In this document: in pieces, positions 3,001 to 60,330 of the stretch
How the letters are laid out: every line of letters starts with the position of its first letter
Position numbering within the stretch: the stretch's first letter is position 1
Origin: Klebsormidium nitens
Taxonomy: Eukaryota; Plantae; Klebsormidiophyceae
Direction of reading: 5' to 3'
DNA length: 64,000 nt
NCBI GenBank assembly: GCA_000708835.1
Contig: DF236965.1
Location: 186,001-250,000 of the forward strand
The notes under the pieces: generated by a model
What the model was told of the DNA's origin: nothing
The model's database searches: none
What the model saw: the letters and a program-made list of their open reading frames with translations, nothing else
Made by a program: the position numbers and the translations under genes

Positions 3001-6000
3001 GCAGCAACAGCACCCAACTGTTACTGGTGCGTTCTATATGAGGTAAGAAAAGCGACAATAAGCTAGCAGTGACTTCGTTCGGGGTCCTCTTCCTCTAAGG
3101 TAGAACATGGTGGAAGGATGCAGCACGTACCGTGTGATTTGCCAGGATGAAGTTGACGGAGTCGAGCTTGAGCAAGAGCTTCCCGCTCATGTACCTTCAG
3201 GAGAGCGAGAGCGTCAGTCTGAGCATGGCGGTCAGAACTTGCGCTCTTTTTTCAAGTTTCGAGACAGGTTCTATCCGTCGCACACAAGAGAGACACAGAG
3301 TCAATCGAGGCAAAGCACCGCACCAAACACCAAAATCCCAACTTACGTCGTTGTCTAAAAGAGCGATACGAAAGCGATGCTTCAGCCAGTTGTTCTCCTC
3401 TGGCAATGCAGCCTGATGCCATCAGCAGATCGTTTTCTTTCCTCGAAAAAAGGAAAGAAGGAAGTTACAGCCGCCCTGATTTTCAGCTCAAGACGGAGCT
3501 TCCTAGAACCCTGATCCCAAAAGCTTCGAAAAGACGCCTAGAGAGTCGGTACAAGCAAAGTCAACTGCCAAGTCCTCGATCTGGATTCGAAAATGGGCGC
3601 TCAAATCACACAAGAGTCAGGGTGTGCAGAGCAGGTCGATACCATGCAGACCTCTGGTCATTATCGAATTGCGGGATCTGAAGGCCTTTGAAACACAGGT
3701 GGAAGCCGAGGGAGGCAGCCCTTCAACTGCTCTCCGTGCAACCTGTCATTTTTCTTCCTTGCTCCGAGATGCGACGTTCACAAAAACTATAGCTTAGCAA
3801 TGCATGTTGGCAGCCAAAAGCGCTCACCCGGCAGCGAGTTCCTGGAACAGGTTCAGAGTGGCTTCTATGACTTCCTCGCAGAGCGTGTAGCATTTCAGGT
3901 TGGTGGCGATCTTTCCTACTGTGACGTTGAGAACCATCAGATGGTCTTGCAGGCCCAGGAGCTCGGTTAGGCGGGTGTAGAGTTGCTGCAGCCAGAAAAC
4001 CGTCGAAAGTTTCATTTCAAGTTCAGAGTGCTATTGACCGTCTTGACCCAGATTTGATGTGTTTGCGGCGCGGCCCTTGAGACATCGAAGGGCGTATCAC
4101 ATGACATGAAGCTCAGCACGGCATGCTAGTAAGGCAGCAAGTGTTTGTCCTTATCACAATCAGGTGTTTAGGAGCCTTGGAAGCAGAGGACTTGCTGCAA
4201 GAAAGAAGTCTTTGCAGGTGCTTGCCTTTGACGAGTGCATTGCTTGATCCCCGACGTAGACCCGCCGGAAGCTCTGGAAGAAGGCGAGAATAGCGGAATC
4301 CAGCCGCTGTTTACTCCGCTCTTGGTACCGCTGCAAGAGATGGCGCATCCGTCAGGCTGATGTTGAGGGGCAAGCATGCTACGGCGAAGCTTGCAAATAG
4401 GTCGCAAAATAAGCTTCACCAACATTAGGTCCCCTAGCTTGCTCGACAACCCGTTGCAAGTTTGCAAGGAGCAGATATTCACATTTTGACCGCATCGCAA
4501 TACAGATTTAGTATCTCCATGTTCGCTATCGATGATTCCCCTGATTTTCAAATAGGGGCAGTCCGACCAGATTTAATTTGATGGGAACGCTTACAGAGAA
4601 GTCTCTCCGGACAAGCTCAAAGTACTCGCGTTGCCTCAAAGGCACTGACCTGAGCGTGGAACCCCGTGTCTGACACCTGAATCAACTGGAACACCCTCGC
4701 AGCGAGCTCGCCGTCGATCACCTCCTGGGACTCAGCACTGCAAAGCGAAGAAAGGCAGTCATTACGGGTTTTAAGGCAGACAACCACTTGGGATTTCTAC
4801 GTTCTTGATCAGGGACGCAAACAATCGCTTCCCATGTGCATGGTCCTCAATCAGCAAGCTCCACATGACACTCCGAACTGTTTCTCTGGCTGCGTGTCAA
4901 TGCATACCTGCTCGAACTCATCCTCCCTCTTATAATCGCCCCGATTATATGGACAAGCCACGTCAGCTGTCCATCCATCACCGCGATCTGGGCCGCGTTC
5001 CCCTGAACCTGCCCCGCTTCAGTGAAGCGCTGAAGCAGGGGCTCCATGAGCGCAATGATGTACTTGGACGTCTTCTCGTACTGCAGGGGCGGCAGCGGGG
5101 CCAAAGGTCAGCGCCGCTCGTCTAATCCTGTACATGACAAATTGATTGCGCGAACATCCAGACCAGCTCCGTTCCACTTGGAAGAAAGGTGTACGGTCGC
5201 TCAATCATGAGAAAGCTCCTCAGCTTAGAGCGACAAGCAAGCATAGGGTTGGTCGCTAACAAGTGGCCAACCCGTACAGTGAGTCAGAAGCCCGCCAGAG
5301 CTGCCCTGTGGACTCTGTGCAATAGTAACGGTTCGAAACCGCTCACCTGGAACCGACACAAGTAGGGCAAGCTGTCTAGTTGGTCCTGGAGCTGCTCCTC
5401 GTTGTCCAGCGGATCCTCTCCGGTGGTGCCTTGGAGCACCGTCTGGACGGAATCCAATCTGCCACAGCGTTGCCACTGTCAGTTGCTTCATTTTGAATTG
5501 CACAATGGTCCCTCTCATTCTGCCTGCTAGAAGATCAAAACACTCAAACTTGTTACAAGCCTTTGGACATGCGTCAGATCGCAATGGTTTTGGCCGCTTC
5601 AATTGCAGCTCAGATGCGGACTTCAAACCCACCTGGACGTGATGTAGGCTTCCGTGATCTTGGGCACAAAGCCCTCTAGCAGGCTTGGCGAGTCGCTCTT
5701 CAGGTACGGCATCGAAGACACCAAGCGGGACCACAATCCAAGCAGGTAATAAACGCTGCCACTGGCCCACTGCAGTCAACAATGATCCAATTTGAGACCT
5801 TTCTTTGTTCCTGTTCAGAACGGTTTGGCCACATACGTTGTCCTTCCTGGGCGTTCTCTGATCGCAGCACTCAACATATGCGTCGAGTACTATGCCCAAG
5901 ACGTTATCAGGAGATGAGCGGGCAACCAGAATCTGCATCAACCAAGGCAGGAGTACTTCATAGAGAACACTAAGTCAAAAGCACTGACCTGCCAGCTTTG

Positions 6001-8637
6001 GAGGGACTTGATGGTAAACTCGGCCACCAGTCTGATCCAGTCGGCATAGTTCTCCACGTTTACCAACTCGGACAGCTGCATTGAAGACAGGACGTCTCAA
6101 TCAGAACACGCGTTTCCTCCAAAGCAACTGTATTCGAAAACGCAATAAGACGCCAAACAGAAGGCCTCCACTCAATACATCTGATCACAGACGAAAGCAG
6201 AGTCCTTACTTGATAGTTGGTCTTCAACCTCCCCAGTAACCGGCAGTACTCGTGATAGTTGTCGTGCTCCGAAAGGCCTGCAAACGAAGGCAGGAAATGG
6301 TCACGTGAAATGCATCCGGATCAATACCTCGATTGGACGAGACTTGGCCTCTGCGGAATCCCAACCTTACCTAGATGGTCAAAACTTGAAATCACCAATC
6401 AGACATGCGGAATACCAGACGACATGAGCTACAAGTTGGAAACCTGAAGCCATGCAATTACACAACTCCTCACCTTGTTGTGTTCTAAGAATCTCTCTGG
6501 TTCCTGTCATGAGGTGAGACAGGAACTTTGACCGTTCCGTTTCGCCCGAGAAGAGTGACCTCCGTACCGATGCTAATCGGACAAGGCACTCCAGAGCCTG
6601 CAGAAATAGTCAATGGCAAGTAAGCAAAACAACCATGACACTTCTTTCACCTCCTTTCACAAACCTTGCCTGTCAAAGATTGCTGTCATAAGGACAAACC
6701 GATAAATAAAATGGTGCCACTTCGACAAATTGTGCCACTTCAATATGAAAGTCCTCACCTGGTTGGAAAGTGGTGGCTTAGTGGATGAGTAGTAATCCAA
6801 GAAGAGCTGCATCGTGGCTGTGTCCTCAATGACAGGCCTCCAGGACGAGGGGATCTGTTACAACATGGAGAAAGCATGGTGAGGTCCTACAGACTCCTGA
6901 ACTCATCTACATCTACTTTGTGCATGCCAGGGCACGAAAGCTGTCCTTACCAATTCTCTCGCTTGTTGTCTCGCTTGTTGTCTTGCAGAATACATGGAAT
7001 GCAAACTGCTGAAACTGACTGCCATACCCTCCAGATAAAAGTAGGTTCACATGTGACTAAGTGTGGAAGCCTCACCTGGATGGTCCCGAGGTCTTCCGAA
7101 CTCTCATCCAGTGATGTCCCAACGAAGTCGAATGACAAGCACTTGAGTGCCAAACCAATCGCTTGCTCCCGCAGCTTATCATCGGCTGCAGATTTCAAAC
7201 GATCCCGTCATTGTTCAGAGTCCAGAGTAGAGTGGCCGATACCATGCTAGTGCGACATCAATCTTGTGACGTCGAAGAATCATTCTCAAGTCGATCTTTG
7301 TACAAGTGCTTGTACATCAACCTCTTGAGAACGGATATGGCGGAACCTCACCATTGGCCTGCAATTGTCGCAGTGACGTGAGGGAGATCTGGAATGTCTC
7401 AAAGAGTGCCAAGTCCCGGAATGAGCAGGCGGTCTTCCGGTGATGGGTCAGAGACCGACCAGGTGTGGCCTGAAGAGAAAGTTGGGCCGTGAGTAACAAG
7501 CACAGGTTTATTTCAAAGCAAGGGTTGGGCGACTCTGAGGCAGACTGTTTGAGTAAGTGAAATGAGGCAGACTGTTTGAGTTAAGTGAAATTCTGCTTTT
7601 CAGCAAGCCATGCGAACAGTATTCAAAGAATCCATTCAAGCAGAAAAAGGAAAGTGGGGCAGAAGCACCACCTGATTCATCTCCGCCACCAACTGGTTCA
7701 GAATCTTCAGACCAAGGTAGAAGTGATCAAGGGAGCCCTGCATGATCCGGACAGCAAAAGATGGTTATTGAGGACTCAAGGTAAAAGAGACCATGAGCAA
7801 TGGAGAGTTCCGCACAGCCTGCAGCCTCATCACGGTAAGCGCTCAGACACACTGTGCAATTAAATGAGGCAAAGGCAGGATCTGACCAACTTCTGGACGG
7901 CAAGTGCCAATATGCCCGGTCCAAGTTGTCCAACTCTGACATGAATGACATAAGTGTAAGAAAAGTTACCACCACCAGTTCTATGATTACCTGGGCCAGA
8001 AACTTCATTGCTTCTTTCACAATGTCCCGATGGCGGTCATCGTCGTACCAACCAAGTTTCGTGACTCGACACAGTAGTTGTATGAGCGAAGTTGTAACAA
8101 AGGGCTCAGCTTTCGGCCCCTTCGTGGCCAGGTACGAGACCACATAGTTTCCTGCAGCACACAAGATACTCTTGGAACAGCTCAGATCAGCAATGCTGGT
8201 CCCGGGGTTGCCACAATACAGGCGAAGGATCAACATGTTCACTAACCATCACAATAAGCGTTCCGCATGCAATTTACAGCCTTTAGCGCAATTGAGTATA
8301 TATGTGCCCAGCCTGTTCGCCAACAGATGCCAATGTACTCCGCTTGCTGCATGGTAGCCCATCAACAAGGCTCTAGAGAAAGCAGGTAGTCCTTACGAAT
8401 ATCGAGTCGAAGCTGAGTTGAGAGAGTGTTGTCCGTGAGGAGTTTGACAAGGCTGGAGCTTGCCAACAGCTGGGCATAGGGTGATGCCGAATTGTCGAGA
8501 ATGTACTGACACTGGGAGATGTAATCGGTGTTCACCGAGAACACTGCCAGCGTCTGCTCTGCATGAGCCCGCTCCTGGGGATTGCTAGAATTGTACAGGC
8601 GCTCACACAGCGACTCCAACTGGGCCAAACTCTGCAT
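1..8637 (-). CDS. XPO7: Exportin-7 (importin-beta family), multi-exon; 3' end continues beyond position 1
   Basis: ATG at 8637 ([17 protein letters not shown]...). Exons join in phase at canonical splice sites, e.g. 8637-8397, 8151-7991 and 7737-7672. Peptides include [90 protein letters not shown] and, at the window edge, [28 protein letters not shown]. All match plant exportin-7 as recalled. Confidence 0.95.
2614..2677. repeat. 30-bp direct repeat (period 34) in an XPO7 intron
   Basis: gcgcgaaggacaagcagagaagcaggatca occurs twice, exactly. Confidence 0.9.
3986..4225 (-). other. GC-AG intron in XPO7
   Basis: The exon ending HSSK (AAG|GCAAGC) joins CAG|CAACTCTAC (QLYTRL). The conserved peptide requires this join. 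Confidence 0.7.
7536..7590. repeat. 27-bp tandem duplication in an XPO7 intron
   Basis: tgaggcagactgtttgagt(t)aagtgaaa occurs twice. Confidence 0.9.
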
Positions 8638-9167
8638 ATTGGCCATCTTTTTGCAGATTGGAACTCTATTGTAAACCCTCCAGGCAAGTACTTCAAAGTG
8701 GAAACTCCAACATGGGAGGCGGCCTTAGAAAAGACATCAGCACTGGCTGCCTGGAACTTTCATGAGGAACCTGCAAAAGCGGTCAATGCGCAACCCGCCA
8801 AAGGAACTAATTGCATGGCAAACCTACTCATCCATTTCGTGCTCACATATCGATCCGCACCAATGGAAACTCGGGCTGATCAGGAAAGCGGGTCAATGCT
8901 GTCCGTAATGCAACCAGAACTCTTTCTAAACACCCAAGCGTTGGCACCTTCCATCCATTACTTGCAGCATCGTTGGCTGACAAAGAGACACAACCTTCGT
9001 CCGGAAGCCTGAAGGAGGACCAAGATCAGGCCAGGTTGCAGGCGCCTTAGCAAACAACACGCTGCTACGTAGGACTAGCGCATTGCCCACATGTATGGTG
9101 AAGAATGCAGGAGGCACGTGAGGAGAGGAAGCTATCTTAGGTGCCAGCTATTGACTATTCTCATATT

Positions 9168-16070: not shown

Positions 16071-18679
16071 TCAATTTGACGCTAAAGATGCTTTTTTCTT
16101 GCGAAGGAAGCCCTCCGCATCAATTTGACTGATCTTAGCCGCCAGAATGAAATCGTTCTCGCTAAGGCCACCTGCAGATATAGTGCTAAGGACAATCAAG
16201 AGGCCTCCAATTAAAAGGTCTCGAGATGTTAGCTGTCCGCTCTTTAGGTTCGTCTGGTTGAGAATGAGTGGCGCAACAAAAGGTTGGCATAATCATGGGG
16301 CCCTTTTGCCTCAACGAAGAGGACACAGATTGACGGGCAGCCCCGGTTTGAGACATTCAATCACGAGGAAGCAAGTGGCCCTTTCTGTACAACGATTGGA
16401 ACTGCTGAGGTCGTAAGTTAACTCCCAATCACCAGGTCAACCAGGAACTCTTTAGTAAGCAAAGACCAAAAGCTGAAAGATCTCTCCGGCTGCTACGGGG
16501 TGTCGCCCACCAATCGAAGCAGCACATTTCGGTGGGAAGCAGTCTACGTCTGGCGAGCATGGCTGCGTTGTACTCACCGATGGAGTGGGTGTTGATCTCA
16601 ACGCTCAGCTTGTTCCATCCCACCAGGTGAAGATCCGGGTGGTGGCCTGTGCAGAACGAATCGACTTCAGCACAATACACAGTCATTGTTTCTTGGCGGT
16701 ACCCTTGAGCTAAGTCAGATAAGGCGCTCAATAAATTCTCTTGGCTCCCGACCCCTGAACAACACTCAAGAAATATTACAAAGTGTATCTGTTTCGAGAT
16801 TGGTCGAAGCTGAAACGGCTTGACCACGCTTCTTATATGACTGTTCAATTGCAGCGTGAGACGTACATAGACCAGCGCCCCTGTCAGTAAAGACTGACGT
16901 CCTGTACGTGTAAAGCAAGGGGCCGGGAGGGCCAGCACTCGTGTCGACCAATTTAGATTTGGGATCAGAATGGAGAGCGGAATGGAGAGAGAAGCATGTG
17001 AATACACCTACACCCAAACTCCTCATGTACTGTCTCTTGCCAAACGTGTGAAGACGGAACTCACCTTCTTGCTCTGCAATTTCACCAATCTTCCCCATGA
17101 ATTCAAGACCCTTCAAGAAGTTCTTCGTCTTCCATTCTCGTCTTAGCTTGAACTCCCCCTCGGTGAGAAGCTCCCATCCAGGCACCTGCATCAATATCGT
17201 CATTAACCTTGACACCAGCTCTTCCCGAGCTTTGAAAGTCTCCATGACCTGCCAACTCCGGGGAAACGCTGTCAGCATTAACGCACCAGAGTTTCAGAGT
17301 TGTAACGAAAGAGGGGCCGCTCATGTTGTCACTAATGGAGGACCTTACGGGCGCGTCTCACTTGACATGAACTAGGAGTTTCATTTGACCCATGATGCAA
17401 CAGCTAGCTTAAGTGGTCAGGTTTGCACAATCTGGATAAGCCTCATAAAACAAGTGTGCCCGGATGCACAAAAGCCAATATGATGCTCAAAGCATTGGCT
17501 CTGATGTACCACTGTGCCAATTTGAAGGTTAAGTGAGTAAGGAATGCGTGGAAGTGCCTGACCTCTTGCAGAAGCTCCTCAGCGGCTTCCTTCTGGAGCG
17601 CTTTCACATTCTTCCCCTCACAAGGGATGCATCTCTTGCTGGCAAGCTCAGCCGTTTCACCTGATCCTGCAAGGAACCGCCTCAGCTGAGTAGAGTTGAG
17701 CAGAGAAACAGATTGATATCAGTTGCGTCAACCAGATGCTTCGAGATAGTCCATTCCGAACAGAAGTCTTGCAGTACGCCCTATTGCATGTTCCGATTAT
17801 TACTTCTAAACGGGCAAAAGCAATGTTTCTTCCAGTCAAGAATGATGAAACTTAGAAGTAAGACCTTCTAACTCCCCAAATCAACTAGTGCTGAACTGTT
17901 GAAGCACCTGATGGCCCCGCCTCCGCCTGCATGCTGACTCCTCTGCTTGCAACCTGACTGGTGTGCCTGTGTCCAAAGTCCGGCGCTACAAAGACCTGCA
18001 GGTAGATGCAACATTGTCCTTGAAGCTTTACGACATATCCCCTGGAAAGCATTTCAGACCAGCACGAGTCTATCAGCTCAAGGTTGCCCGACTTCAAGCT
18101 TCCAAGTTGGCTTGACAGCAAGAGGGCTACAAAAGGACAAGCCGATCAATACAGTCCCAGCATTTTGACAATCGGGCCAACGTCCAAGCTTTGAACGGAT
18201 CAAAGCTCAAGAGCGACGTTTCAAATCTGCAAGGGGTTCCAATCGGGCCGAGACTCCCTGGACAAATGATTGTTGAACGGCCAACGGCAACCACTGAAAG
18301 CGTGGAGCGCAATGTCGTGGCAGCCAACATGTTCACTTTGACTGTCCTGTGTAAAAGTCAATCCACTTCAAGCATTCATCCTCTCTATACCCTTGCTCAA
18401 CCACTCTCATGAGGCTTGTATACATTCAACTGCCAGCTTTGCAAGTAACAACAAAGGCGGCGCTGGTCCAATGCACAATATCCAAGGCGTTGCACATACC
18501 TTGAGTGGCGCTGATGAGAGAGACCTGTAAACCCCTGGAGTTGCCCAGCGCGCACAGATATTTGCAATTGTCTTGGAAGGCTGAGCTTTCACTTTCTGCA
18601 AGGGATTAAAAGCAGACGCAGTTGCAGATCGGCAAAGCACCCAGGAGCTCTGTGACGCCTTCAGGGAAGCGGCAGCCAT
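16071..18679 (-). CDS. PCD: Pterin-4-alpha-carbinolamine dehydratase with N-terminal organellar transit peptide
   Basis: Exons 18679-18500, 17995-17908, 17666-17563, 17185-17065, 16646-16578 and about 16171-16071. Peptide LASKRCIPCEGK...VPGW...[40 protein letters not shown] carries the E-x3-HHP...W-x9-H-x8-D motif of the active (At1g29810-like) type. The Ser/Ala-rich N-terminus looks like a transit peptide. Confidence 0.9.
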
Positions 18680-19722: not shown

Positions 19723-22700
19723 ATGGCTTCGAAGGTGGGTATGTCGCAAAAGCCTGGCAGTTAGGACGTCAGGAATGTGACAGCTCTCATTGCTAGCATC
19801 ATCACAAAAACCTTGCACGAATTACATATGCAGGCAGCTTCGTTGTTGCTGACACTACTTGGTAGTTCACCTCGCTCACCCCTTCAAGCAAGCCAGATAT
19901 CTTGTCAGCAGCATGCAAATGCTGTGAACTCTCAAATCCTACATGTCAGATCTTCGAGGCTCGAGTGGATACTCTGCCAATGTAATCCAATCTTCAAACT
20001 TACTTATTGCGAAAGAGCTGTATAAGCAGCCGAATTGTGACGTATATGCAGGTGTTGACTGCCATGGCTCGGCACATGACCTCAGAAAGCAGCCACGCCA
20101 GCGAGGAAATTTCCAACTTCAGACAGGACCTGGACATACTCTTGCTAGCGAGCGGTCCAAATGGTGCAGGAATAGGCCTTCCGTTGCTGCCTGAAGAAAA
20201 GTTCTTCCCAATCTGGAGATGGTTGAACCAGGTGATTGGCAGTTTGAATCTAATCCTGATGGCTGCAAGCCTGGGGTGGTGGCGTTTGTGATTAGTTGGC
20301 TCAGCTGCTATCACTACTTAACATCACCGCGGCTGGAGGATTCAGACTTTCTGATTGGGATTATCTTCACCATTGATTCAACAGTTCAGAAGAGCGCCTT
20401 CTGTGTAGAGAGCATCTACACAGAGGAGCTCAAGGTGGTGTTGTGTTTGTACATCTTCTTGCGGTGGCTCTGGTGGTCCTGTGGCTTTTAAGTGAAACTG
20501 GTTTCAGTAACGGCTTCATGTCACCGATCCAGACCATGTATCATTATCTCAAAGGCAAACATTCCCACTGTGAACGTGATAATACGCCTAAGCAGGCACT
20601 GTCTTCAGTTCCAATACGAGACCCATTGCAAGGGGTAAAAGGTCTTCAGCCTGTTTTCTACATGGTGCCGCTGACTTGGTCTAGCTTCTTACAACGTGGG
20701 TTCCATATTCTTAGCCTCACAATCTCCATCGATTTCAGCCTGTTGATCTTGAAATTTTATTTTGATCCTGTCCTCTGTCCAATATGATGCAGGCTGAGCC
20801 CTCGACTGCATTCGCAACTGGACTCCTCAGCCGAGTGGCAGAGTTCGATGGACAGGCAGAAAATGGGGGCAGCCGACGAAACAGGGGCATGTCTGTTGCT
20901 GTCGGATCACCAGGAAAGCCCAAGCCCGGCACACGAGTAACTGGTGCAGAAGGGGAGGGGTCTCCTGGGGCAAGGAAGACAGCCCCTTCATCTGATCGTA
21001 TCCTCATAAGCTTTGCCTCCGAAACTTCTGTGATGTGCTTTGTTCCCTTCCCGGTTAGAATAAAGCAGGCCGGTTGGCTGTTCACCAGATATCAGACCGG
21101 ATTGAAGAGCTGTATTGGCAGAAAGCTGCTTTATGTCTCTACATATAATGATGTGTACTATGTTCTTCCTTGACATGCAACGTGCCAACTCTATCTGGAG
21201 GAGCGTCTTTCAACACCCCACGCATACTGCAACTTTCTCTGAAACTTGTTAAGTATCCTTCCAGACTTACGACTACCGTCCTGTGCTCGTTCAAAACGTA
21301 CAACGCCATATTGGCCTCCTTGACCACGTTCCCAGAGCCCCTCATCACACGCACCGCGGCCCTCAACACGGTTCTGCTGCTGGCGTTGCACCACCCGCTG
21401 GACACGACAGACGAGGCCCTTGCGGCGGTGCTCGGGAGCTTCATGCACGCCCTCAGCAAGTCGCTCGACTGGACAGACTTCGTGAGGCCCAGTTCTTTTG
21501 TCGAGCTTGTAGTGTGGTCCTGAGGAACTACTGTTGTTGTTGTAGGTTGGACTGCCCGATTGACTTTGAGCGTCACTGGACCGCCATTTCGATCGGTACA
21601 AGTCTGCCGATCTGATTTCGTCTCTCCATTAATTTCGAAGCCTTGGACTTTTGGAAAAGCCTGAGGACAAGTGCAAGCAGATTTTTGCCTTTCCTTGTCT
21701 CCATGAATCTAAAAATGCTAGTTTTACCGGATTTTTCGTCGAACCTGTCCGCACGGGATGGTCAAGAAACTGGCGAGACACCCGCGAGTCTCAGAATCTT
21801 TCGGTACTCGATTCGGCTGAACACACCGGGCAGGTTCCTGTGCTCTATCTACTGCGGAAGTACTGCCCGGTAGGTTGACCTGGCCAGATTCGTGCACCCA
21901 ACTCAAACCGGATTTTGTACAACCCCCAAATTTTCCACCCGTTCAAGGCGGACAGGTTTGACGAAAACTCCAGTATGCAAGACCGCTCATGCGAGGGATT
22001 TGCTCGTAACGTCTTAGGTCGTCTCGGCGGTGCGGCAAGGCCCCGAGGGCCGACTGAAGACGCTGGGGAACGCGGTCGGGCAGTGCGCCAATCTGCTGTG
22101 CAACAGCCTCCTGGGGGACGCTGCCATCGGTAACGGCCCTTTCTGTCTTTCTGTCTGCTTTCAGGGATGCCCTTGCAGAGAGTCGGAACTGTAAAGAGGG
22201 GCTGCGAGCAGCCGTCGTTCTAAGTGAAACCGCTGTTCCTGTGGTTCATTCTCGAGACTGAGATTTGGAGACGTAGGCTTGTAAAAGTTCCTCAAAACAC
22301 ACGCGGTCACGATTGGGCGACTTGCACTTTGTCCGAGCGCCCTGGATTGCTTTCGCACTGACCGTCTTCGTGACTACAAATAATCAAAAACTGGCATCGG
22401 GAAGTCACCGTCCACTTTCGTTGTCGAGCGGCCGTTCTCTTTCCACGTCATCAGGGAAAGTGACCGTTTCCGAAGCCCTCGAAATAAAATTGTCCGACTC
22501 CTCATGATCGAACTAGAAAATTGTTACAAAATTTCTTCGCCGACCGAGTCTCAACCTTTCAGCTCCTGCTTCTGATCACAACTCCTCACCGGATTTAGTT
22601 CCGTTCCGTCCGCTTGCCAGGCAGCGGCTTCATTTACACGTGGCTCCAGGGCCAGTCGCTCAAGCCCGGGCTGGCTCCGGCCATTCTGTCGGGCCTCATC

Positions 22701-25700
22701 ACCGAGACTCAGAACGTGGAACCGGGGCAAGGCCCCGACTGCCTCAACCAGGGGCTGTGCCTGCTGCACATGGTCCGCCAGTTCCTTTCCCTGGTGAGAC
22801 GTATTTTGTGGGTGACTTCGTCGTCTGTGTCCCTGAAGGTCCTCTCACAGATGCTGAGCAGGTGTTTGCGGCGCCAGAATGCTGCTGATTGTCTACGAAG
22901 GGTGGTTTTGTGCTTCAAGGGTCCGGAATGCTGCACTTCGTTGAGCATGCCTGATGATATGCAATCCAAATCATGCTCCGTAGTAATTATCGGCATTCTC
23001 ACTTGCCTTGGAACTGTCTCGTGCTGCAGAACGTGTACGATGACGATATGCTGACGCAGCTCTCGACAGCCGTGAGCTCGCTCTACTTCTGGCCCAACCC
23101 GGTCGGCAAATACGCTGCTGAGACGCTCCATCTCATTGCTCGGGAGCAAAGATCACCGGGTGAGCCGAAAGCCTGATTCACGGTAGCTACTTATGACGTA
23201 GTGCGTCATCATATCCAAAACCGGCGACCAGAAGGAAGCAATTCCTTTTTGCCGTTGACAGCCGTTTGATCTGAAATGGGTAGCGTCAACGGGGGGTTTT
23301 GGGCTAGATGAGAACGTGGGCGCTTGAAACTCGGGTCTGAGTCTCGACTTTCGTATCCCGAAAGTCTCGACTTTCGTGCCTGACCTGACGTAGCTGTGTT
23401 CGTCGTTTAGTGAGTTGTCAGTACCGTCGAGAGTCGCTCTCTTGCTTTTTAGAAAAAACGTTGGCCGAGCCCGAGCGCCTGGAGACCTTTGCTTCATTTC
23501 CGCCGTTCCGGCGCTTCATTCGCTTCCAGGCACCAGCTTGCGGCGCCGTCTCGCTGCTGACAACACGGCTTTGAGCACCCGCAAGGAGACTGACGAAGGG
23601 TCAACCCACCGGCGCAAGGTCACGGTGCTCCTCAACTCGACCTGCCCGCGGGCCTCGGTTGTTGCCAACCTGCTGCAATCGGAGCCCGGGGGTACGGGGG
23701 AGACGCCCCCGGAGCAAACGGCCGGGGTGCAGCTCCGACTGATCGTAGGTGAGCCAAACTCTTCGTTCCTTAGTAGACCCTTTAGAGTGTTTCGTTCCCC
23801 GGAGCAAAGATCAAGTAGATGGCCTGATTGAAATGCTTCGATTGAGAATGGCTGTAGCTATGTTGGTTTTCCGGAGGTGACCTGGATCGGCTAGGCAAAG
23901 CTTGACAGCTGGATGCTGAAGTAGCAAGGAAGCTTCGGATGTCCATCCATGATTTCAAGAACCAGCTCGGCTAATTATTCTCGGAAGCTCGCATCTATGG
24001 CTCCACTCCCGCGTCAAGAGAGATTAGCAAGATGCTCAAATCCAGTTTCGTATGTCCCCGGAAGCCAGGCTTTGCTGCGGACTGTGAAAGTCTAATCTCG
24101 TTCACCTTCGCATTGGGAAGTTCGGTGATCGTTGTTGTGGCCTTCAGACCTCATTTCAGATGCCTCCCTTCTCTGTTGATCCTTGTAATACAGATAGCGA
24201 CGTTGACCAATATTCCACTCTACTCTGTTCAGGAATGCTCCAGTCTGCGGGGATCGACGTGTTGAACTCAGCAGAAGGCCGGGCACGCGCGAGCTTGCTT
24301 GCGAATCTGCCCGTGGACATGATAGGCAATGCCTACGAGGCCTGCGTCAACACGGCATTTGAAGCGGAGATGATGTCGTGAGCTTTTCTCATAAAACGTC
24401 TCTTCAAAGTGCCGGCTCCACGAAAATGTGCGGTATGTATCTCACCTAACAATCGACGGAAGTGATCTTTCCAAGAAGTACGACAAAAGCCTGGCGAATT
24501 GAACTCGCGCAAAACTTGCAAAGTGGACGGCTACAAAGAAACTCGTGGTTCTCTTCAGCCTGACCCAAGAACGCTGCTTTGCGTCCGGAGCCTTCAGCAG
24601 CTGACTGGACTCTGTCAGCGCTGATCATGAGGGACAGCACTGTAGTACAAGTATGCCGCACGACCGAACTTGCTCCGGTTTAGAACGCTTTATAGAGGAC
24701 GCACACACTCGAAGCTCTTGTATCTGCACTTTTGTGATGCAAACGCTTTGAGACAACGGCCATAGAAGCAAGGCCGTAGGCAGATAGTAATTTCGGGACA
24801 CATCACAGAGACCAAGCGAAATAGAATGTACTATCGAAAGCAGGCCCCGCAAGTTCCTCACAGCAATTGCTCAAGGGAACTGTATCTTGACTGGTACGCC
24901 GTTTTTCACTGCAGCGACGTAAAACAGGCGGCTGCGCACCGGGCGTCGCACCTAGCTGACGTGTGGCGGCTACTTGGGGAGGACGTGGAGGCGCAGCGCA
25001 AGACTGGGGGAGGCGACCAACCGCCGGAGCAGCGGCTCAGCTGCCTTCCCATGCAGGTCGCCGCCCTGGTTGGGAAGGACCGCCCCCGAGAGCCCGTCAC
25101 TCTCGACCTCAACTCCTGCGCAAAGTAAGGGGAGCCAGTTCAGTAAACGCTTTTCAGGACTTACGGTGCTGAAACAAGAGCGAACGGGGTCTGATTAAAC
25201 GTGCGCTGGTCATAGTTTGAGATATTGACCGTTGCCCTTAGGAGACTGAGAGGTATTACGGCCCATGCGACGCCAGAGCCGCTGGAAGCCCTTGCCAGGT
25301 GGAATCACCGGACTGCCCCCGGTTCTGCAATCAACCAAGGCGTTCGTTCTGGAGTGGTGTTTGGGGCTTTTTCTGGCCTCTTCTACATGTTTCCGCTGTT
25401 CCGCGATGGAAACATTCAAATGTGACATGGAGAGGCAAGCTGGATTACCCCGTGCGTATGTGTGATTCGAGGCGGGAGGAAATGCAGGAAACCTTCAGGA
25501 TTTTAGGCTGACCCGGCGCATGTATCCGCAGGGCTCTTCCTCTCCAGTTCGAGGTGCTTTCCGCTGAGCCGCGGTGGCGTTCCGCTGTGACGGATGCCGT
25601 CGAGGACGAGGTGGGGTCGACCCCGGGGCCCATCATCCCGTGCTACGCCCACACCGGGGCGGAGGAGACGCTGCTCGACGTCATCAAGAAGTATGACGTG

Positions 25701-28700
25701 GCGCCCAAAGGGCGGGTGTACCAGAAGCAAAGGTGAGCTGCGCTATCATTCCGATCTCACAAAGTGCCTAGGGCACGTGGCGTGCTGTTCTGCTCTCTTC
25801 CTTAGATACCTCGTATTTGCTGTTCTGTAGTCGTCTTTACTGACAAAGGCTGCGGTTCCTAGACAAAATGCTCGGAAACTCTAGGAGGAACTGCCTATGA
25901 GCTCCGAACCCAATCCTCGAGATACGCTCCCAAATTCGCATCGCTGTCCGTAAGATTTTCGGAGCCTCATACCGCCGAATAAGTCCTTCGCTGAACCAGT
26001 CTCTACATGGTTTGGACTTGTTGATCATTCTCCTTCCGCTTTGAGTTTTCCGTTCGTTAGCAGAAAGCTAATTTTGTGGGCAGTCAAAGAAGTCTTTTTC
26101 AAAATCTCGCTTTTCACAGGCTAGAGCCCATCCGCATTGTCCTCGCGGGTGGCGACGGCAGCCTGCACTACGCAGTGGCTGCCTACGTGGGCCTGCTGTA
26201 CGCGAGCAGCGACGGGGGCACTGCCGCAGGGGGCACGTCCAGCAGCGAGATGCTGAACGCAGTCGGTAAGGCAATTTTGGGTAGGGTACTTAAGGCTTTG
26301 CATTTTCAGTGGCTTGGAACAGCTCGGTTGATCTGGACGCACGTGTTGATGCGCGAGTGCTATGACCAAAGTGCTGGATGAAGGGAAGCCCGCTGTCCTG
26401 GAGGATAAGTCTACAACCTGCGCTGAATTGGTAGATTCGCCTCCGCATATACTTGGTGGCGGCAGCAAGCTAACGATGGATACCCATAAGTCGGTGAAGT
26501 CTACGAAGCGCAGGTCTGACTTTGGGACGCATGTCGATTAGAGTCCAATAGACGATGACATGCGTTTCTGCTTGACTTGAAACGGCTCTTGACCTGCCCT
26601 GAATGAGCCGAAATCTTCGCAGAGTTGCGGTTCTACATCGTCCCGTGTGGCGAGAGCAACGTGCTGGCGTCGTACCTGGCTCAGGAGGACATTTGGTACG
26701 GTTCCGGATCGACGCTCTGTTAAGAAGCCGCTTGAGCCGGTCGTGGGTCCTCTTATTTTATGTAGCAGTCTTCACGGATCTAACATTGAGCGACGGTCAG
26801 CGCCCTTCTGACGTCACCGACTTTTGCGACTGGTTTCTCCTGAGAGCTTTCGTTGCCGCGGTCGAGCTTTGGAGAAAAAACAGATAAGCAAGCGTAGGAA
26901 ACTAGAATCACGAAGGCACCCGTAACCTTCTCGGTTCCTGTAAAGATGATTTCCGGATGGAGCTTTTCTCCACCATCTGAAACGGAAGATCACGTGCGTC
27001 TGGATACAAAAGATTTTTTTAATGCGCCGGCCGACTTATTCTCGTGGTCACTAGCTAGACGATGATTCCAGCGCAACCTGAATCTGCTGCCCACTCTGGC
27101 CCGTACCTTCGCCTTTAATCACTCTTCTCACACACGTCCGTTCTTTCACAGGTACTACGCCAACACGTACCTCCCCGTGCAGAGCCCCCTCCCCATCATC
27201 CCCCACGTGGGCCACATGACCCCCGGCTCCACAACCGCGCGCGCGCCTCTCGCGCTCAACCGCCCCAGCACCCTGCAGCCCCAAAAGTCCCAGCCCTCCG
27301 TGCCTCCATCCACGTCATCCGTCCACTCCTTTGCCAAGCGCTCCTCTCCCCCAGCCTCGTTTCTCCAGCAGCCAACGCCCGGGGGATCCCTTTCAGGGAG
27401 CCTATCCAGCTCCGGGTCCGGCATTTCTCCCCAACCGGGCGGCCCCGGCTCGCCCTTCCAGTCGAGGCCGACGTCAGTCGCCGCCTCGTTCTCCCCCGAA
27501 CGTTTCCAGGGGGCACGTGGCAGCTCGCCATTCGCCCCCATCGCGGCGTACCCTTCGCAGCAAAGCACCGCTCCGGGGGCGGTCCCTCCAGGAGCAGCAA
27601 CTCCCCGAAACGTGCAGACGGCGACCGCGGCAGTGAGCGGCAATGCAGAAGGTGTTAAGGCGCCGGCTGAGGAGGTCGCCGAAAGCGCGCCGGCGGCCAA
27701 GCAGCCGCTGCGGTTCAGCCAGAGGCTGCCGCTGACTCGGAAGACGAAGGCGCAGGGCCGGAAGTCGACAGTGAAAGGGGCGGACGGCAGCGCGACTGTG
27801 AGACCGCGTCATATGACTCCATAGCGCCCTCCCTTTCAAAAGCTGTTGGCACCGAATTTCATCAGAAAGCTCGAGTGGCTTCAAGGATTCGAAAGCTCTT
27901 TAAAGTTCTGTTGTCGTTTGGTGCGGCTGCAGCATGCGGCTGCAGCATGCGTAACGAGATTGAAAGCGGACCTAATCTTAGAGCGTGCTCGAGCTGTGGT
28001 AAAGCATGAAAATCAGAAGCGTTCTTCTTCCGCCTTCCCGAATTGCCACTGAAATCATCTTGCAAGACCGCCGAGTTTTACACGGTACAGGGTTGCTCAC
28101 CTTTCCCACTGCAGTGATTGTTGGCACTGAGCGGACATGTTTATTCCACAGGCCGAAACGCCGATTTTTCAATTCACTAGGCAAATAGAAAACCTGGTGC
28201 GAGAAGCGGAGGTGCCGGTGAGAGTCAGCATCTTCAACTGCGAGGGCTGGTTCAAAAACGGTGAGGCTTCTGGCGCTTGAACAAGTCCCTTGCTGCGAGA
28301 CAGGTGACCGATTCCAGGAGGCGAAGCGCGTATGGTGTTCCTTCGTGAAGCAAGCACTCTTTTTTTGGTCTGTGAATGCATCTCAATTCGCCTTCGTTGC
28401 TCGGCTCTAGATGGGCATAGAAGAAGGCTTCAATGGCGGGCAGGATTGCGCCCCGAATGTCATGAAATGTGCGACGAAATGCTGCCGCAGCCTCACCATA
28501 ACTCAAAACGGCGGTGCTTCTGTCTTATACGGACTGTGGAGCGAGCCTGTAAGTTCGGTTATCCACTGAGGTACTATCCTCCACCATAACGTCAACCGGC
28601 TATACACTTTATTTGGCTATAACGTCCACAAGCTTATGGTCATCCGTACTACGGGGTTTCGCGTGCAGGCAAGAAGAACCACCACTGCACGCTGCTGTTC

Positions 28701-30088
28701 TTCTCCCGGGCCGAGATCGGGCTGAGTGCAGTGGTGGCGACGCAGGGGGAAGACAAGCAGTCCGCCAGCAACTACCAGAGCGTGCCTCGGCGCGCGTCCG
28801 TCGGGCTGTCAAGCACGCAGGGCCAAGAAAGCCTGGAAACGCTCTCGAAGACGTTCAGGATGGGAGCCGAGATTACGCTGCAACAGGTAATCAAGCTCGT
28901 CTCGCCACTCTAGATAATTTGGATTTGTTGAAATGACTGTGCTATGTCGCAGACTTTCTGCTTGCTTTTGGATTGCGAAGAAGTGGGGAATCGGCACAGC
29001 GTCCAGTATTTGCCAACGGCGGGTCAGTTGGCTTCTTGACTGTAGTTATCCGTGATTCTGTCGATGAGCTACTGCGGTCCGCGTCAGGCCGCTTTTGTTC
29101 GCAACTCGGTTTCAGTTATCCTGGACATCCTTTCTTAAACGAAGAACGTAGTCAGAAGTATGGCGTGGGGCCATACGAACTGAGAGCTCTTTCGTTACTG
29201 CCCCCTCGTTACGATCGCTCTAGCGGCTGATGGTTACGACAGTGACCTAACAGAGCCAAATGGTTTTCTGGGCAACATAGAATGGTCAAAATGTTTTTGC
29301 CGCAGGTGACGCCATATGGGGAGGAGAGTGACGAAGTCGTCAAGATTGACAGCAAGGCGGTCTCTGCGATCGTGGCCGTCAACGTGCCGCGACCGGGCGA
29401 GCAGCGGCTGGGCGCTAACCCGTGCACTGACACGCTGGAGATGTGCCTCGTCGACGCCGATGCGGTGAGGCGACAGCTTGGTTTATTAGAAAAAGCAGCA
29501 TTTGACGAAGTTTGATTTGCCTCGGGAAGATTTGCGCTTGCACACGGCATGTAAAGTTGAGCCTCAGGAGAGGAAGAAGTGGCCATCGCTAAAGGGAGAT
29601 TCAAGGCATGCCACTCTTTGATTGAACGTGAAAATCGCAGGTATTAAGCAGGTTGTAAGGCTGACTAAATCAGAGTGGAGGCTCGTGTATGTTAAGATGC
29701 CCTTTCTGCGCGGAGAGGAAAACCATGGGAGAGCACAATCTGCACCGTCTTTTGACGCCTTCTTTTCTCAGCCGATCTGATCTCTGGCACCGTCCCGTCC
29801 AGCGTACCGTGATCCTATCGTGGCAAATTAAAAGAAAGCGTTGACATTTTGCAGCGGAGTCGCCGCCGTTTGCGGTCTATTGACGACCTACTGGACGGAG
29901 CGTCGTGCTATCACTCCAACAAACTGGTCGTTGAAGCGTCCGACTTCTCCAAGCCATTCCACGTGTTATTAGATGGAGAGGTGTACGGGCCGTTTTACAG
30001 GATCCGCATCACCCCATGCCGATCGCCCAAGAATCGAAGCGAGATTCTACGCTTTCCGGTCATGACGTACTTGCCCATTGTGCAATAG
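19723..30088 (+). CDS. Large multi-exon protein similar to PI3K class IB regulatory subunits p101/p84 (PIK3R5/PIK3R6 family); start codon tentative
   Basis: Phase-compatible exons from about 22020 to the stop at 30088 give, in order: DDDMLTQLSTAVSSLYFWPNPVGKYAAETLHLIAREQRSPG, RRKVTVLLNS, IRIVLAGGDGSLHYAVAAY, LRFYIVPCGESNVLASYLAQEDIWY, QIENLVREAEVPVRVSIFNCE, RAEIGLSA, EITLQQV and SKPFHVLLDGEVYGPFYRIRITPC...LRFPVMTYLPIVQ. These are colinear with recalled human p101 blocks. The exons before about 21300 (MASK|AASLLL...) are less certain. Confidence 0.75.
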
Positions 30089-58487: not shown

Positions 58488-60330
58488 ATGAAGTTGGTTA
58501 GGTGAGTCTCCCTGCGATCGTCTTTGCAGATATGTTTTTGAACAAGCCGAATTCGTGGTCAGAAATGTGCGATTGCCTGCATGGTTGCATCAAAAGACGG
58601 AGTTTGGTAAGGGGCCCACCTCAAAGATAAGAATGGGATGATTGTCTTTGCTTCAATTCAGCCAGTAAGATTCATTTCAATCCAGTCTGGCCTGGTGATC
58701 AGTTACTATCCAGTCAGCTTGCGCTTATCAAGCTCTCATGTAGGTGACAACTGAATTGTTGGTAAAGGTGGAACCAAATTCAATTTTGGTACTTTGGGCA
58801 AGTTGACAAACCACTGTTGGAAGCTTCAATTTTGACTACATTGAGGACGAAGTTTACTTCTTCAAAAGACATTTCAGGCATACCACCCTCCTTTCGGTGC
58901 TTGCATCACGACAGGGACGCATTGTGCCTGGTTAATACCCCTTCATTTACAGACACCTGAGTGCCGAGAGGTGTTTAGCTGGGTCTTATAAGATTGTTGA
59001 AAGTGCCCTGACCACTGACGATTAATCGTGCTCCACGTTTAATGCTACTTTTCAGGCTGCTTTTTAAGGGATTCTCTGCTTGGCGGAGATTTTACCTGCA
59101 AAAGCTGGTTCTAAAGCATGGAGAAAAACACCTCGGTGCAGGTTCCTCTAATCAGTGGGTCTGACTGAGCGGCTTAATAGGTCTATTGAGCAGCTAATGC
59201 AGTTACTATTCATCGAGGTCGGAATCAATGTCTCATGTGCTTCCCTTATGCATCTATGCAGATTTCTTATGAAGTTGCACAATGAAACGGTCAATATAGA
59301 GCTGAAGAATGGGACTGTGGTAACCGGGACGATCACAGGCAAGTGTCATCACTTGTCTATAGTTATGCACTCTGCTGGACAAATTTTCGCTTTAGTAAGG
59401 GACTCCGTATGGTTTTGCAAGCACAGGTTTTCCTTCAGACGTCTATGATAGGTTTCTCACTCGGCATGAAGTAACCTGTAAAGCGTAGGATCTTATGCGT
59501 GCGTGTCTTCTCTACTTCGTTACAAAAGCAGCTGGTTGCAATTGCACTGACATCCAGTTTTCATCTGCTGAACTCAAAACCCGAGATAACCTTTGAGCAT
59601 TCAACACGAACTGGCGCAAAGCAGAGCGAATCGGATTCTTGGGCGTTTCAACTTCCTCCAATGAATGTGAGGCCACTGAATGCTTGTCAGGATATGGGTG
59701 CTGTGAAGTGGCAAGACGACTCGCAGCTCTGACATTTTCATAAGCCCCTGTGTGTTTGCAGGGGTAGACATCAGCATGAATACGCATTTAAAAACGGTAA
59801 AACTGACCCTGAAAAACAAGAACCCAGTTACGCTGGAGCATCTGAGCATTCGGGGCAACAGCATCCGATACTACATTCTGCCGGACAGCCTGAATCTGGA
59901 CACGCTCCTAGTCGAGGATGCCCCACGGACCAGGGCGAAAAAGCCCACCGCGGGTAAGAGCTGCCGCTCAGCTTGGTTTCTATTCAGTCTGTTAAGAGAC
60001 TGCTTGGTGGCCGTTTCAAGGTCGCCTTGCATGCAACTATTGCAAAGACCTGGGTGCTTTTTGAATTGTTACTGTCGTTGGTTATGACGCACCTGCTGTC
60101 TCAAAGTGAATGACAGCAGAGCGGACGCTACTTGTGCCCAAACGGAGGACCTTGTGAATGCTCAGATGTCCTTCGTTTTTCCAAAGTCGCGGTTGGATTG
60201 CTCTTACTTTGTAATCTGGTTCCGATACTCCCAAAACACTTTTTTGGTTCTTGTTACAGGGGGCCCGATGGGGCGTGGCAGGGGCCGTGGTCGGGGACGT
60301 GGAAGAGGCCGGGGGCGAGGAGGACGATGA
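58488..60330 (+). CDS. SmD1: Small nuclear ribonucleoprotein Sm D1
   Basis: Exons 58488-58501, 59262-59338, 59762-59953 and 60260-60330 give [41 protein letters not shown]...[26 protein letters not shown]... with a GR-dipeptide tail. Confidence 0.97.
59339..59761 (+). other. GC-AG intron in SmD1
   Basis: ACAG|GCAAGT...TTTGCAG|GGGTAGAC restores TITGVDISMN. Confidence 0.85.

What the first reader, a model, noticed from the sequence alone, without database searches (positions are those of the whole stretch)
19723..30088. Full-length p101/p84 (PI3K-gamma regulatory subunit)-like gene in a plant-lineage genome
Seen in sequence: the stitched exons give ordered blocks that match recalled human PIK3R5 along its whole length. 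LYFWPNP...EQRSPG aligns with FLTWPVP...ELKAPG; KVTVLLN with TVTVLLLN; IRIVLAGGDG...AVAAY with LRIVVFGSD...VARAY; LASYLAQEDIWY with ISHYLGMLDPWY; AEIGLSA with LELGHSA; and KPFHVLLDG...RITPC...FPVMTY with CPFAVCLDQ...EVSPC...LPIMTF. Established: p101/p84 are the G-beta-gamma-sensing adaptors of class IB PI3K, characterised in vertebrates, and land plants are known to have only class III (VPS34) PI3K. Inference: this may be a relic of an ancient G-beta-gamma/phosphoinositide module kept in an algal plant lineage, either with an unrecognised class I-like p110 partner or as an orphan with a new role.
Basis: partly seen in the sequence, partly recalled or inferred. Interest (0 to 1): 0.9.

Follow-up and report, generated by a model that had tools for sequence, protein, structure and literature searches.

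The report
Algal homologue of PI3K-gamma adaptor p101
The alga Klebsormidium nitens has an expressed 17-exon gene that is a true full-length relative of p101/p84, the helper subunits of the animal signalling enzyme PI3K-gamma; papers date these to vertebrates, yet the family reaches green plants and amoebae and may still be a working lipid kinase in the alga.

Summary
All quoted peptide blocks lie on the + strand, in order, in one gene of 17 GT..AG exons (20219-30088). The gene encodes exactly the public hypothetical protein KFL_000160310 (GAQ78628.1, 1113 aa) of Klebsormidium nitens. RNA contigs support six of its splice junctions.

The family is old. It occurs in Viridiplantae (Cymbomonas, Chlorokybus, Klebsormidium, Selaginella, Adiantum), Amoebozoa, Thecamonas, Rigifila and Palpitomonas. 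The green clade branches in species order, so descent is vertical. Papers I read date p101/p84 to vertebrates.

Unlike p101/p84, the algal protein keeps four lipid-kinase motif remnants (LLN, GGDG, PxGxxN, DGE).

Not tested: a PI3K partner in K. nitens, G-beta-gamma binding, kinase activity. The G-beta-gamma module idea therefore stays speculative.

The parts
20219..20434 (+). Exon 1 (aa 1-72), annotated start codon. This is the least certain part of the model.
   Evidence: Exact mapping of P0059. AlphaFold pLDDT is about 30 for residues 1-71. No RNA check was made here.
20793..22129 (+). Exons 2-4 (20793-20997, 21336-21481, 22018-22129; aa 73-227). They encode the N-terminal helices of the solenoid, with a disordered insert at aa 98-137.
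   Evidence: Homologues P0038 and P0039 hit 21347-21487 in order.
22621..22793 (+). Exon 5 (aa 227-284): solenoid helices including LLHMVRQFLSL.
   Evidence: An RNA contig loose end at 23029 carries the end of this exon.
23030..23159 (+). Exon 6 (aa 285-328). It carries the family's signature loop, LYFWPNPVGKYAAETLHLIAREQRSPG (23081-23158). This aligns with WPVPY..ELKAPG of p101 and LPAPY..TAVPG of p84.
   Evidence: P308, E323, P327 and G328 are invariant in 16 full-length homologues.
23530..23748 (+). Exon 7 (aa 328-401). It contains strand beta-1 of the lipid-kinase-like domain, KVTVLLN (23616-23636). This is the remnant of the NPxSG motif and aligns to TVLLLNP of p101.
   Evidence: strand 357-362; DgkB, SphK1 and YegS alignments start at model residues 332-356.
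24233..25124 (+). Exons 8-9 (24233-24377, 24915-25124; aa 401-519): a helical insertion inside the lipid-kinase-like domain.
   Evidence: helices 387-478. The RNA joint 25124>25532 is GT..AG.
25532..25732 (+). Exon 10 (aa 519-586): strands and helices leading to the GGDG strand.
26120..26265 (+). Exon 11 (aa 586-635): IRIVLAGGDGSLHYAVAAYVGL, with an intact GGDG motif at 26148-26159.
   Evidence: ESM features place it with DAGK_cat. Pfam DAGK_cat gives E=0.009-0.04. RNA joint 26264>26622.
26623..26695 (+). Exon 12 (aa 635-659): RFYIVPCGESNVLASYLAQEDIWY, with the PxGxxN motif at 26643-26660.
   Evidence: (Pacs-1 E=0.011). RNA joints on both sides.
27152..27797 (+). Exon 13 (aa 659-874): a long Pro/Ser-rich disordered linker.
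   Evidence: pLDDT is below 50 for residues 677-873. RNA contigs cover 27151-27775 without a break.
28152..28886 (+). Exons 14-15 (28152-28260, 28669-28886; aa 875-983): the start of the C-terminal beta-sandwich (REAEVPVRVSIFNCEGW, FFSRAEIGLSA).
   Evidence: RNA loose ends at 28668 and 28888 fit the neighbouring exons.
29306..29464 (+). Exon 16 (aa 984-1036): beta-sandwich strands (NVPRPGEQR..NPCTDTLEMCLV).
   Evidence: RNA loose end GACGCCATATGGGG...
29855..30088 (+). Exon 17 (aa 1037-1113 plus stop): KPFHVLLDGEVYGPFYRIRITPC (LLDGE at 29966-29980) and the C-terminal FPVMTYLP (30056-30076). TAG is at 30086-30088.
   Evidence: (57 homologues found with this exon).

Best explanation
The gene (Klebsormidium nitens KFL_000160310) encodes a genuine full-length member of the p101/p84 (PIK3R5/PIK3R6) superfamily. 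It has an N-terminal helical solenoid carrying the W-P-x-P-x-G...E-x-x-x-P-G loop. [quoted passage not shown] It belongs to an old eukaryotic branch of that superfamily, which I did not find described in the papers available here, and which was inherited vertically in the green lineage. These points are shown.

How it most likely works is inferred. It probably acts as a membrane-proximal adaptor. The solenoid loops dock a partner enzyme; these are the most conserved N-terminal feature of the whole family, and in p101/p84 the alpha3-alpha4 and alpha5-alpha6 loops form the main p110-gamma interface. The lipid-kinase-like module would face the membrane. The likeliest partner type is a PI3K-like lipid kinase with a C2 domain, if the alga has one. 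I put about 0.4 on this adaptor mode, with or without retained nucleotide binding. I put about 0.3 on a still-active lipid kinase and about 0.3 on another scaffold role. The confidence figure given applies to the identity and homology statement.
For: Profile of 16 homologues against PDB sequences: the only significant hits are p101 (7mez_B E=2.6e-21, 8so9_B) and p84 (8aj8_B E=3.4e-19), collinear over the solenoid, the GGDG region and the C-terminal domain. A profile of green-lineage members alone gives p101 E=1.7e-11 and p84 E=4.3e-10.

Pfam PI3K_1B_p101 scores above its gathering cut-off in 9 family members, up to 46 bits.

The gene is single and expressed: exact 17-exon map, collinear homologue hits, six RNA-supported junctions.

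Descent is vertical: the green clade has 100/98 support and branches in species order.

The WPxPxG..PG loop is conserved in all full-length members. The p110-gamma interface is formed by the alpha3-alpha4 and alpha5-alpha6 loops of p101/p84, and aromatic cation-pi contacts present in p101 are lost in p84 (PMC8397274, PMC10068899). That fits W in WPVPY against L in LPAPY, which is my inference.
Against: The K. nitens protein alone is below Pfam's cut-off (14.6 against 23 bits) and finds nothing in the PDB by phmmer. Membership therefore rests on profiles and on a predicted fold.

No partner is known. I could not search the K. nitens proteome for class I/II PI3K, and none of the scan's notes on this genome mentions PI3K, PTEN or PIP3.

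The protein keeps LLN, GGDGS, PCGESN and LLDGE, which p101/p84 have lost. A purely non-catalytic role is therefore not assured.

The helix numbering that places the WPxP loop at the p110 interface is my inference from the text of the papers, not from coordinates.
Confidence: 0.9

Rival explanations
1. The protein is an active, ancestral-type lipid kinase. On this reading the green-lineage proteins are still working DAG-kinase-fold enzymes with an N-terminal regulatory solenoid, and vertebrate p101/p84 and the amoebozoan members are their dead derivatives. The K. nitens protein would phosphorylate a lipid (substrate unknown) rather than, or as well as, acting as an adaptor.

For: K. nitens keeps remnants of four family motifs: LLN (beta-1), GGDGS, PCGESN and LLDGE.

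Across 29 homologues, all 10 with an intact GGDG also keep DGE and GxxN, and 6 of 6 where the region is present keep the beta-1 Asn. Members with a degenerate GGDG (Chlorokybus, P0038, amoebozoans, Thecamonas) usually lose the others too (tables: 10/0 against 4/14, 6/0 against 4/10, 10/0 against 8/11).

ESM features of the GGDG exon sit with DAGK_cat clusters (0.91, 177 shared features). The closest AlphaFold DB cluster is named 'DAGKc domain-containing protein'.
Against: The coupling of motifs rests on only 3-4 phylogenetically independent contrasts, and the sign test is not significant.

The glycine-rich part of the first motif (NPxSG) is not kept: the sequence is NSTCPRAS. No conserved Lys follows GGDG, as it does in sphingosine kinases (my knowledge of that motif).

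Pfam DAGK_cat is below its cut-off for this protein (E=0.009-0.04) and covers only profile positions 57-99 of 125.

The features invariant across the whole family lie outside the catalytic motifs, so the family's shared function is probably not catalysis.
Confidence: 0.3
2. The protein is an orphan scaffold with a new partner. The alga (like most plants) has lost class I/II PI3K, and the p101-like protein persists because it binds something else, for example the C2 domain of VPS34 or another C2-bearing membrane enzyme, or because it serves in membrane trafficking as the related PACS proteins do.
For: Papers state that plants have only class III PI3K (bioRxiv 10.1101/765594; PMC4617754, with Selaginella as the one exception).

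No note on PI3K, PTEN or PIP3 exists among 4375 scan notes on this genome.

PACS-1 profile hits occur in family members, up to 35 bits against a cut-off of 25. PACS1/2 models match the C-terminal half.
Against: PACS matches cover only query residues 561-1113, whereas p84/p101 cover 198-1113.

The absence of scan notes is weak evidence, because first readers list only what strikes them.

Selaginella has both this family and a reported class I catalytic subunit (PMC4617754), which hints at co-retention.
Confidence: 0.3
3. The resemblance reflects only a shared DAG-kinase fold, or is an annotation chimera of two neighbouring genes (a helical protein and a DAG-kinase-like protein).
For: Single-exon and single-sequence searches are weak. 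No single RNA contig spans the whole gene.
Against: The N-terminal solenoid alone gives the strongest profile match to p101/p84 (41-51 bits), so the match does not rest on the kinase fold.

More than 15 homologues from distant eukaryotes have the same N-to-C order in one protein, several of them from transcriptomes.

Beta-1 of the kinase-like domain (exon 7) lies upstream of the helical insertion and is packed into the same domain in the model.

RNA junctions chain exons 5-6, 9-10, 11-13 and 14-16.
Confidence: 0.03

Closest known systems
p101 (PIK3R5) and p84/p87 (PIK3R6), regulatory subunits of class IB PI3K (structures 7MEZ, 8SO9-8SOE, 8AJ8)
   Different: Identity is about 11-19% in structure-based alignments. 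The protein alone is below Pfam's cut-off. It keeps GGDG, PxGxxN and DGE where p101 has FGSD and LDQ. The G-beta-gamma-contacting segment of p101 (DQDERKIL) is replaced by DGEVYGPF. The N-terminus is about 140-200 residues longer. It occurs in an organism with no known class I PI3K. Partner binding has not been tested.
DAG kinase / sphingosine kinase / YegS / AGK / NAD kinase superfamily (Pfam DAGK_cat, PF00781)
   Different: These enzymes have no solenoid and align only to model residues from about 332-356 onward. Here the domain is split by a helical insert of about 160 residues and a disordered linker of about 200. The first (NPxSG) motif is degenerate. The Pfam score is below the cut-off.
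PACS-1/PACS-2 sorting proteins (Pfam Pacs-1, PF10254)
   Same: Weak to moderate profile hits fall on the GGDG-to-D.WY stretch in family members (up to 35 bits). AlphaFold DB PACS models match query residues 561-1113 (E about 4e-7).
   Different: PACS does not match the N-terminal solenoid. The match is much weaker than to p84/p101. PACS has a different N-terminal cargo-binding region (my knowledge).

Membership tests
p101/p84 (PI3K_1B_p101, PF10486) | Significant sequence match to the family model | tested here: inconclusive
   K. nitens protein alone: 14.6-17 bits against a gathering cut-off of 23 (E=0.007-0.0014). Nine homologues of the same branch pass (28.5-46.3 bits). Profiles of the branch hit p101 and p84 at E=2.6e-21 and 3.4e-19, and green lineage alone at E=1.7e-11 and 4.3e-10, with no other significant PDB hit.
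p101/p84 (PI3K_1B_p101, PF10486) | Architecture and fold: helical solenoid, then alpha/beta lipid-kinase-like domain, then beta-sandwich, collinear over the whole chain | tested here: met
p101/p84 (PI3K_1B_p101, PF10486) | Conserved solenoid loop that forms the p110-gamma interface (alpha5-alpha6 turn, WPVPY / LPAPY) | tested here: met
   FWPNPVG..EQRSPG aligns to it. The loop is conserved in all full-length members. That this loop is the interface is inferred from PMC8397274 and PMC10068899, not measured on coordinates.
p101/p84 (PI3K_1B_p101, PF10486) | Binds a class IB (or class I) PI3K catalytic subunit | not testable with these tools
   No PI3K query sequence was available by reference, so the K. 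nitens proteome could not be searched. A class I subunit is reported in Selaginella, which also has this family (PMC4617754).
p101/p84 (PI3K_1B_p101, PF10486) | G-beta-gamma binding through the C-terminal domain (p101 beta8-beta9 helices and residues 816-830) | tested here: not met
   The 816-830 segment (DQDE/RKIL) aligns to LLDGEVYGPF, a different sequence without the 3-residue insert. The beta8-beta9 helices are already absent in p84 (PMC10068899). Only sequence was compared; binding itself is untested.
p101/p84 (PI3K_1B_p101, PF10486) | Loss of lipid-kinase catalytic motifs (pseudoenzyme) | tested here: not met
   K. nitens keeps GGDGS, PCGESN, LLDGE and the beta-1 Asn, whereas p101 has FGSD and LDQ.
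DAG-kinase-like lipid kinases (DAGK_cat, PF00781) | Pfam match above the cut-off, covering the whole catalytic domain | tested here: not met
   13.9-16 bits against a cut-off of 23.6, profile positions 57-99 of 125 only. One relative (P0027) passes at 27.2 bits.
DAG-kinase-like lipid kinases (DAGK_cat, PF00781) | Full set of nucleotide and catalytic motifs (NPxSG, GGDGT, PxGxxN, DGE) | tested here: inconclusive
   Three are intact and the first is reduced to LLN-STCP. Activity has not been tested.
PACS (Pacs-1, PF10254) | Match over the PACS C-terminal region and PACS-type N-terminus | tested here: not met
   Only a short stretch scores 13.7-15.2 bits against a cut-off of 25. The fold match is limited to query residues 561-1113.

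The most novel reading that the evidence does not exclude
p101/p84 did not arise in vertebrates. They would be the dead end of an ancient eukaryotic lipid-kinase-fold family that was already a partner of class I/II-type PI3K before plants and animals split. On this reading, Klebsormidium, Selaginella and other non-seed green lineages keep a form that still binds nucleotide or is catalytic, together with a so far overlooked PI3K-type partner. Amoebozoan members (for example in dictyostelids) would be the 'missing' regulatory subunits of their G-protein-coupled class I PI3Ks.
Probability: 0.2. Interest if true: 0.9.

Novelty: new variant of a known kind. Interest (0 to 1): 0.66.

Why it matters
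In the papers I could read, the class IB adaptors are said to have appeared in the vertebrate ancestor (PMC4617754). Dictyostelium and Entamoeba are said to have class I PI3K catalytic subunits without regulatory subunits (PMC6563779). p101 is described as lacking homologues other than p84 (PMC8397274).

A full-length, vertically inherited relative in green algae, a lycophyte, a fern, amoebozoans, an apusomonad and others moves the origin of this adaptor back by more than a billion years. It also offers a form that still looks like the lipid kinase it came from.

Two questions become directly testable. The first is what the p101 fold did before it became a G-beta-gamma sensor: enzyme or adaptor. 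The second is whether early-diverging plants and amoebae couple a PI3K-type enzyme to this protein.

For plant biology, it marks a signalling component kept in non-seed lineages. I saw no seed-plant member among the hits I could name.

Tried and rejected
Single exons against Pfam and PDB gave only hints (p101 E=0.13; Pacs-1 E=0.011; no PDB hits).

The whole protein by phmmer against the PDB gave nothing relevant.

The search for homologous proteins was nearly blind to this family. The A1 profile returned only P0066, the Selaginella protein returned only itself, and the C-terminal region of P0059 returned only a Synstelium protein. The taxon list therefore rests on the exhaustive phmmer search with the last exon and on the cluster look-ups.

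The phylogenetically corrected test of motif co-loss had too few independent contrasts (3-4) and is not significant. I report the coupling as suggestive only.

The Ras-family GTPase at the N-terminus of the Thecamonas member would have been a functional hint. It is one exon joined to the p101-like exon across a 1.1 kb 'intron', and the p101-like part then lacks its own N-terminus. I treat it as a probable merge of two gene models.

Contamination or horizontal transfer is rejected. The exons carry spliceosomal introns, RNA comes from K. nitens runs, and the tree follows green-lineage relationships.

Ten paper searches found no description of non-vertebrate p101-like proteins and no report on class I PI3K in Klebsormidium.

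I could not obtain a PI3K catalytic sequence by reference, so the key co-occurrence test was not run.
Full report
WHAT IS THERE. The window is from Klebsormidium nitens. The public protein GAQ78628.1 (hypothetical protein KFL_000160310, 1113 aa; P0059) was found through the cluster of the last exon. It maps at 100% identity onto 17 exons with GT..AG introns on the + strand, 20219-30085, followed by TAG. Other agents' notes on this genome also name K. nitens.

RNA contigs from four K. nitens runs hold only 5-9% of the sampled words, so expression is low. They do show the GT..AG joints 25124>25532, 26264>26622 and 26694>27151. Loose ends fit the joints exon 5>6, 14>15 and 15>16, and cover is continuous over the long Pro/Ser-rich exon 13. 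Twenty-five homologues from other eukaryotes hit the exons in the same N-to-C order. The N- and C-terminal exons are therefore one gene. The 5' end (exon 1, residues 1-71, pLDDT about 30) is the weakest part.

WHAT IT IS. Single exons and the single protein give only hints. Pfam PI3K_1B_p101 scores E=0.13 for exon 6 and E=0.007 for the whole protein; DAGK_cat scores E=0.04; Pacs-1 scores E=0.011 for exon 12; phmmer against the PDB finds nothing.

An exhaustive phmmer search with the last exon found 57 proteins. Many are 750-1000 aa long with the match at their extreme C-terminus. Sixteen full-length ones align along their whole length (A1).

A profile of that alignment, searched against all PDB sequences, gives only three significant hits. 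These are p101 from two species (E=2.6e-21 and 2.7e-21) and p84 (E=3.4e-19). The next hit is at E=0.01, and acylglycerol kinase appears at E=0.79 on the GGDG region. A profile built only from green-lineage members still finds p101 (E=1.7e-11) and p84 (E=4.3e-10), over p101 residues 16-267. Nine members pass Pfam's own cut-off for PI3K_1B_p101, and some also pass Pacs-1 or DAGK_cat.

AN OLD FAMILY. Named members come from these groups:
- Green lineage: Cymbomonas tetramitiformis, Chlorokybus atmophyticus, K. nitens, Selaginella moellendorffii (two copies) and Adiantum.
- Amoebozoa: Cavenderia, Synstelium, Clastostelium, Soliformovum and Rhizamoeba.
- Other eukaryotes: Thecamonas, Rigifila and Palpitomonas.
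- Unnamed marine and soil metagenome proteins.

The best AlphaFold DB cluster is a 945-aa 'DAGKc domain-containing protein' (E=2e-37; the tool does not show its organism). In a maximum-likelihood tree the green sequences form one clade (100/98) whose internal order follows the species tree. Amoebozoa form another clade (100/99). This indicates vertical descent, not transfer or contamination.

In the papers held here, p101/p87 are said to have arisen in the vertebrate ancestor (PMC4617754). Dictyostelium and Entamoeba are said to lack class I regulatory subunits (PMC6563779). p101 is said to have no homologue but p84 in the human proteome (PMC8397274). Ten searches found no description of this wider family.

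HOW IT DIFFERS FROM p101/p84. The lipid-kinase-like domain is split. Strand beta-1 (KVTVLLN, exon 7) comes before a helical insert of about 160 residues. The GGDG strand (exon 11) and PxGxxN (exon 12) follow, then the 200-residue linker, then the beta-sandwich with LLDGE (exon 17).

K. nitens keeps GGDGS, PCGESN, LLDGE and the Asn of the first motif. p101 has FGSD and LDQ. Among 29 homologues, 10 have an intact GGDG, and all 10 also have DGE and GxxN. All six of these in which the region is present keep the beta-1 Asn. Members with a degenerate GGDG mostly lose the others as well, including two separate cases inside the green clade (Chlorokybus and P0038). This looks like one site kept or lost as a unit. 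However, only 3-4 independent contrasts exist and the sign test is not significant.

The columns invariant across the whole family lie elsewhere: the WPxPxG..E...PG loop, D.WY, EIG, and the D and GP of LLDG.YGPF. This argues that the shared function of the family is not catalysis.

HOW IT MOST LIKELY WORKS (inference). In p101/p84 the main p110-gamma interface is made by the alpha3-alpha4 and alpha5-alpha6 loops of the N-terminal helices. Aromatic residues of p101 make cation-pi contacts there that p84 has lost, and the C-terminal proline also touches the C2 domain (PMC8397274; PMC10068899). The best-conserved N-terminal element of the new family aligns with WPVPY (p101) and LPAPY (p84), which fits that description. 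The family also ends in a conserved PVMTYLP.

I therefore favour an adaptor that docks a partner through the solenoid and sits on the membrane with its lipid-kinase-like face (about 0.4). The alternatives are a still-active lipid kinase (about 0.3) and another scaffold role (about 0.3). The first two are not exclusive.

The G-beta-gamma idea has no support from sequence. The p101 contact segment DQDE/RKIL aligns to DGEVYGPF, and the beta8-beta9 helices are missing even in p84.

Whether K. nitens has a class I/II PI3K is the key unknown. Plants are generally said to have only VPS34. A class I subunit was reported in Selaginella, the same plant that has two copies of this family. K. nitens was not in that study's data. 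No scan note on this genome mentions PI3K, PTEN or PIP3, which is weak negative evidence. I had no PI3K sequence by reference and could not run the search.

VERDICT. The homology claim is supported at high confidence, and the functional story is open. This is a new, ancient and possibly still kinase-competent variant of the p101/p84 kind. The gene itself is already in public annotation as a hypothetical protein, and automatic Pfam scans would already tag some relatives. The finding is therefore a reinterpretation, not a new gene.

Noticed in passing
L001:3001-7098 (Thecamonas trahens GL349456.1, AMSG_11887): The Thecamonas member is annotated with a complete Ras/Rab-like GTPase (Pfam Ras, 170 bits) fused in front of the p101-like part. 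The two parts are two exons joined across 1.1 kb, and the p101-like part lacks its usual N-terminus. This is probably a merge of two gene models. If it is real, it would link the family to a small GTPase.
   Followed up: partly
window 28412-28637: One RNA-run contig (run X2, 226 nt, depth 2.2) lies wholly inside the intron between exons 14 and 15. It could be retained intron, pre-mRNA, DNA carry-over or an antisense transcript.
   Followed up: no
window ~690-8724, - strand: A multi-exon importin-beta family gene (IBN_N domain at 8365-8724, E=3e-7; exportin-like helical repeats further downstream).
   Followed up: partly
window 16769-17293 (-), 59707-60084 (+), 62147-62662 (-): Ordinary neighbours: a pterin-4a-carbinolamine dehydratase exon, an LSM/Sm-like exon and an FYRC-domain exon (Pfam E=1e-7, 2e-7 and 1e-18).
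   Followed up: partly
P0066 (ENA metagenome protein, 1484 aa) and P0038/P0069 (919-930 aa): Unnamed metagenome members fall inside the green clade. P0066 has about 400 extra N-terminal residues with no Pfam match. P0038 has lost all four kinase motifs.
   Followed up: no
PACS-1/2 (AlphaFold DB hits A0A5E4A1Z9 and A0A177BCA8): The C-terminal region of the PACS sorting proteins matches the DAG-kinase-like half of this model (E about 4e-7), and the Pfam Pacs-1 model hits several family members. PACS may be another dead branch of the same lipid-kinase fold. I found no paper saying so.
   Followed up: partly
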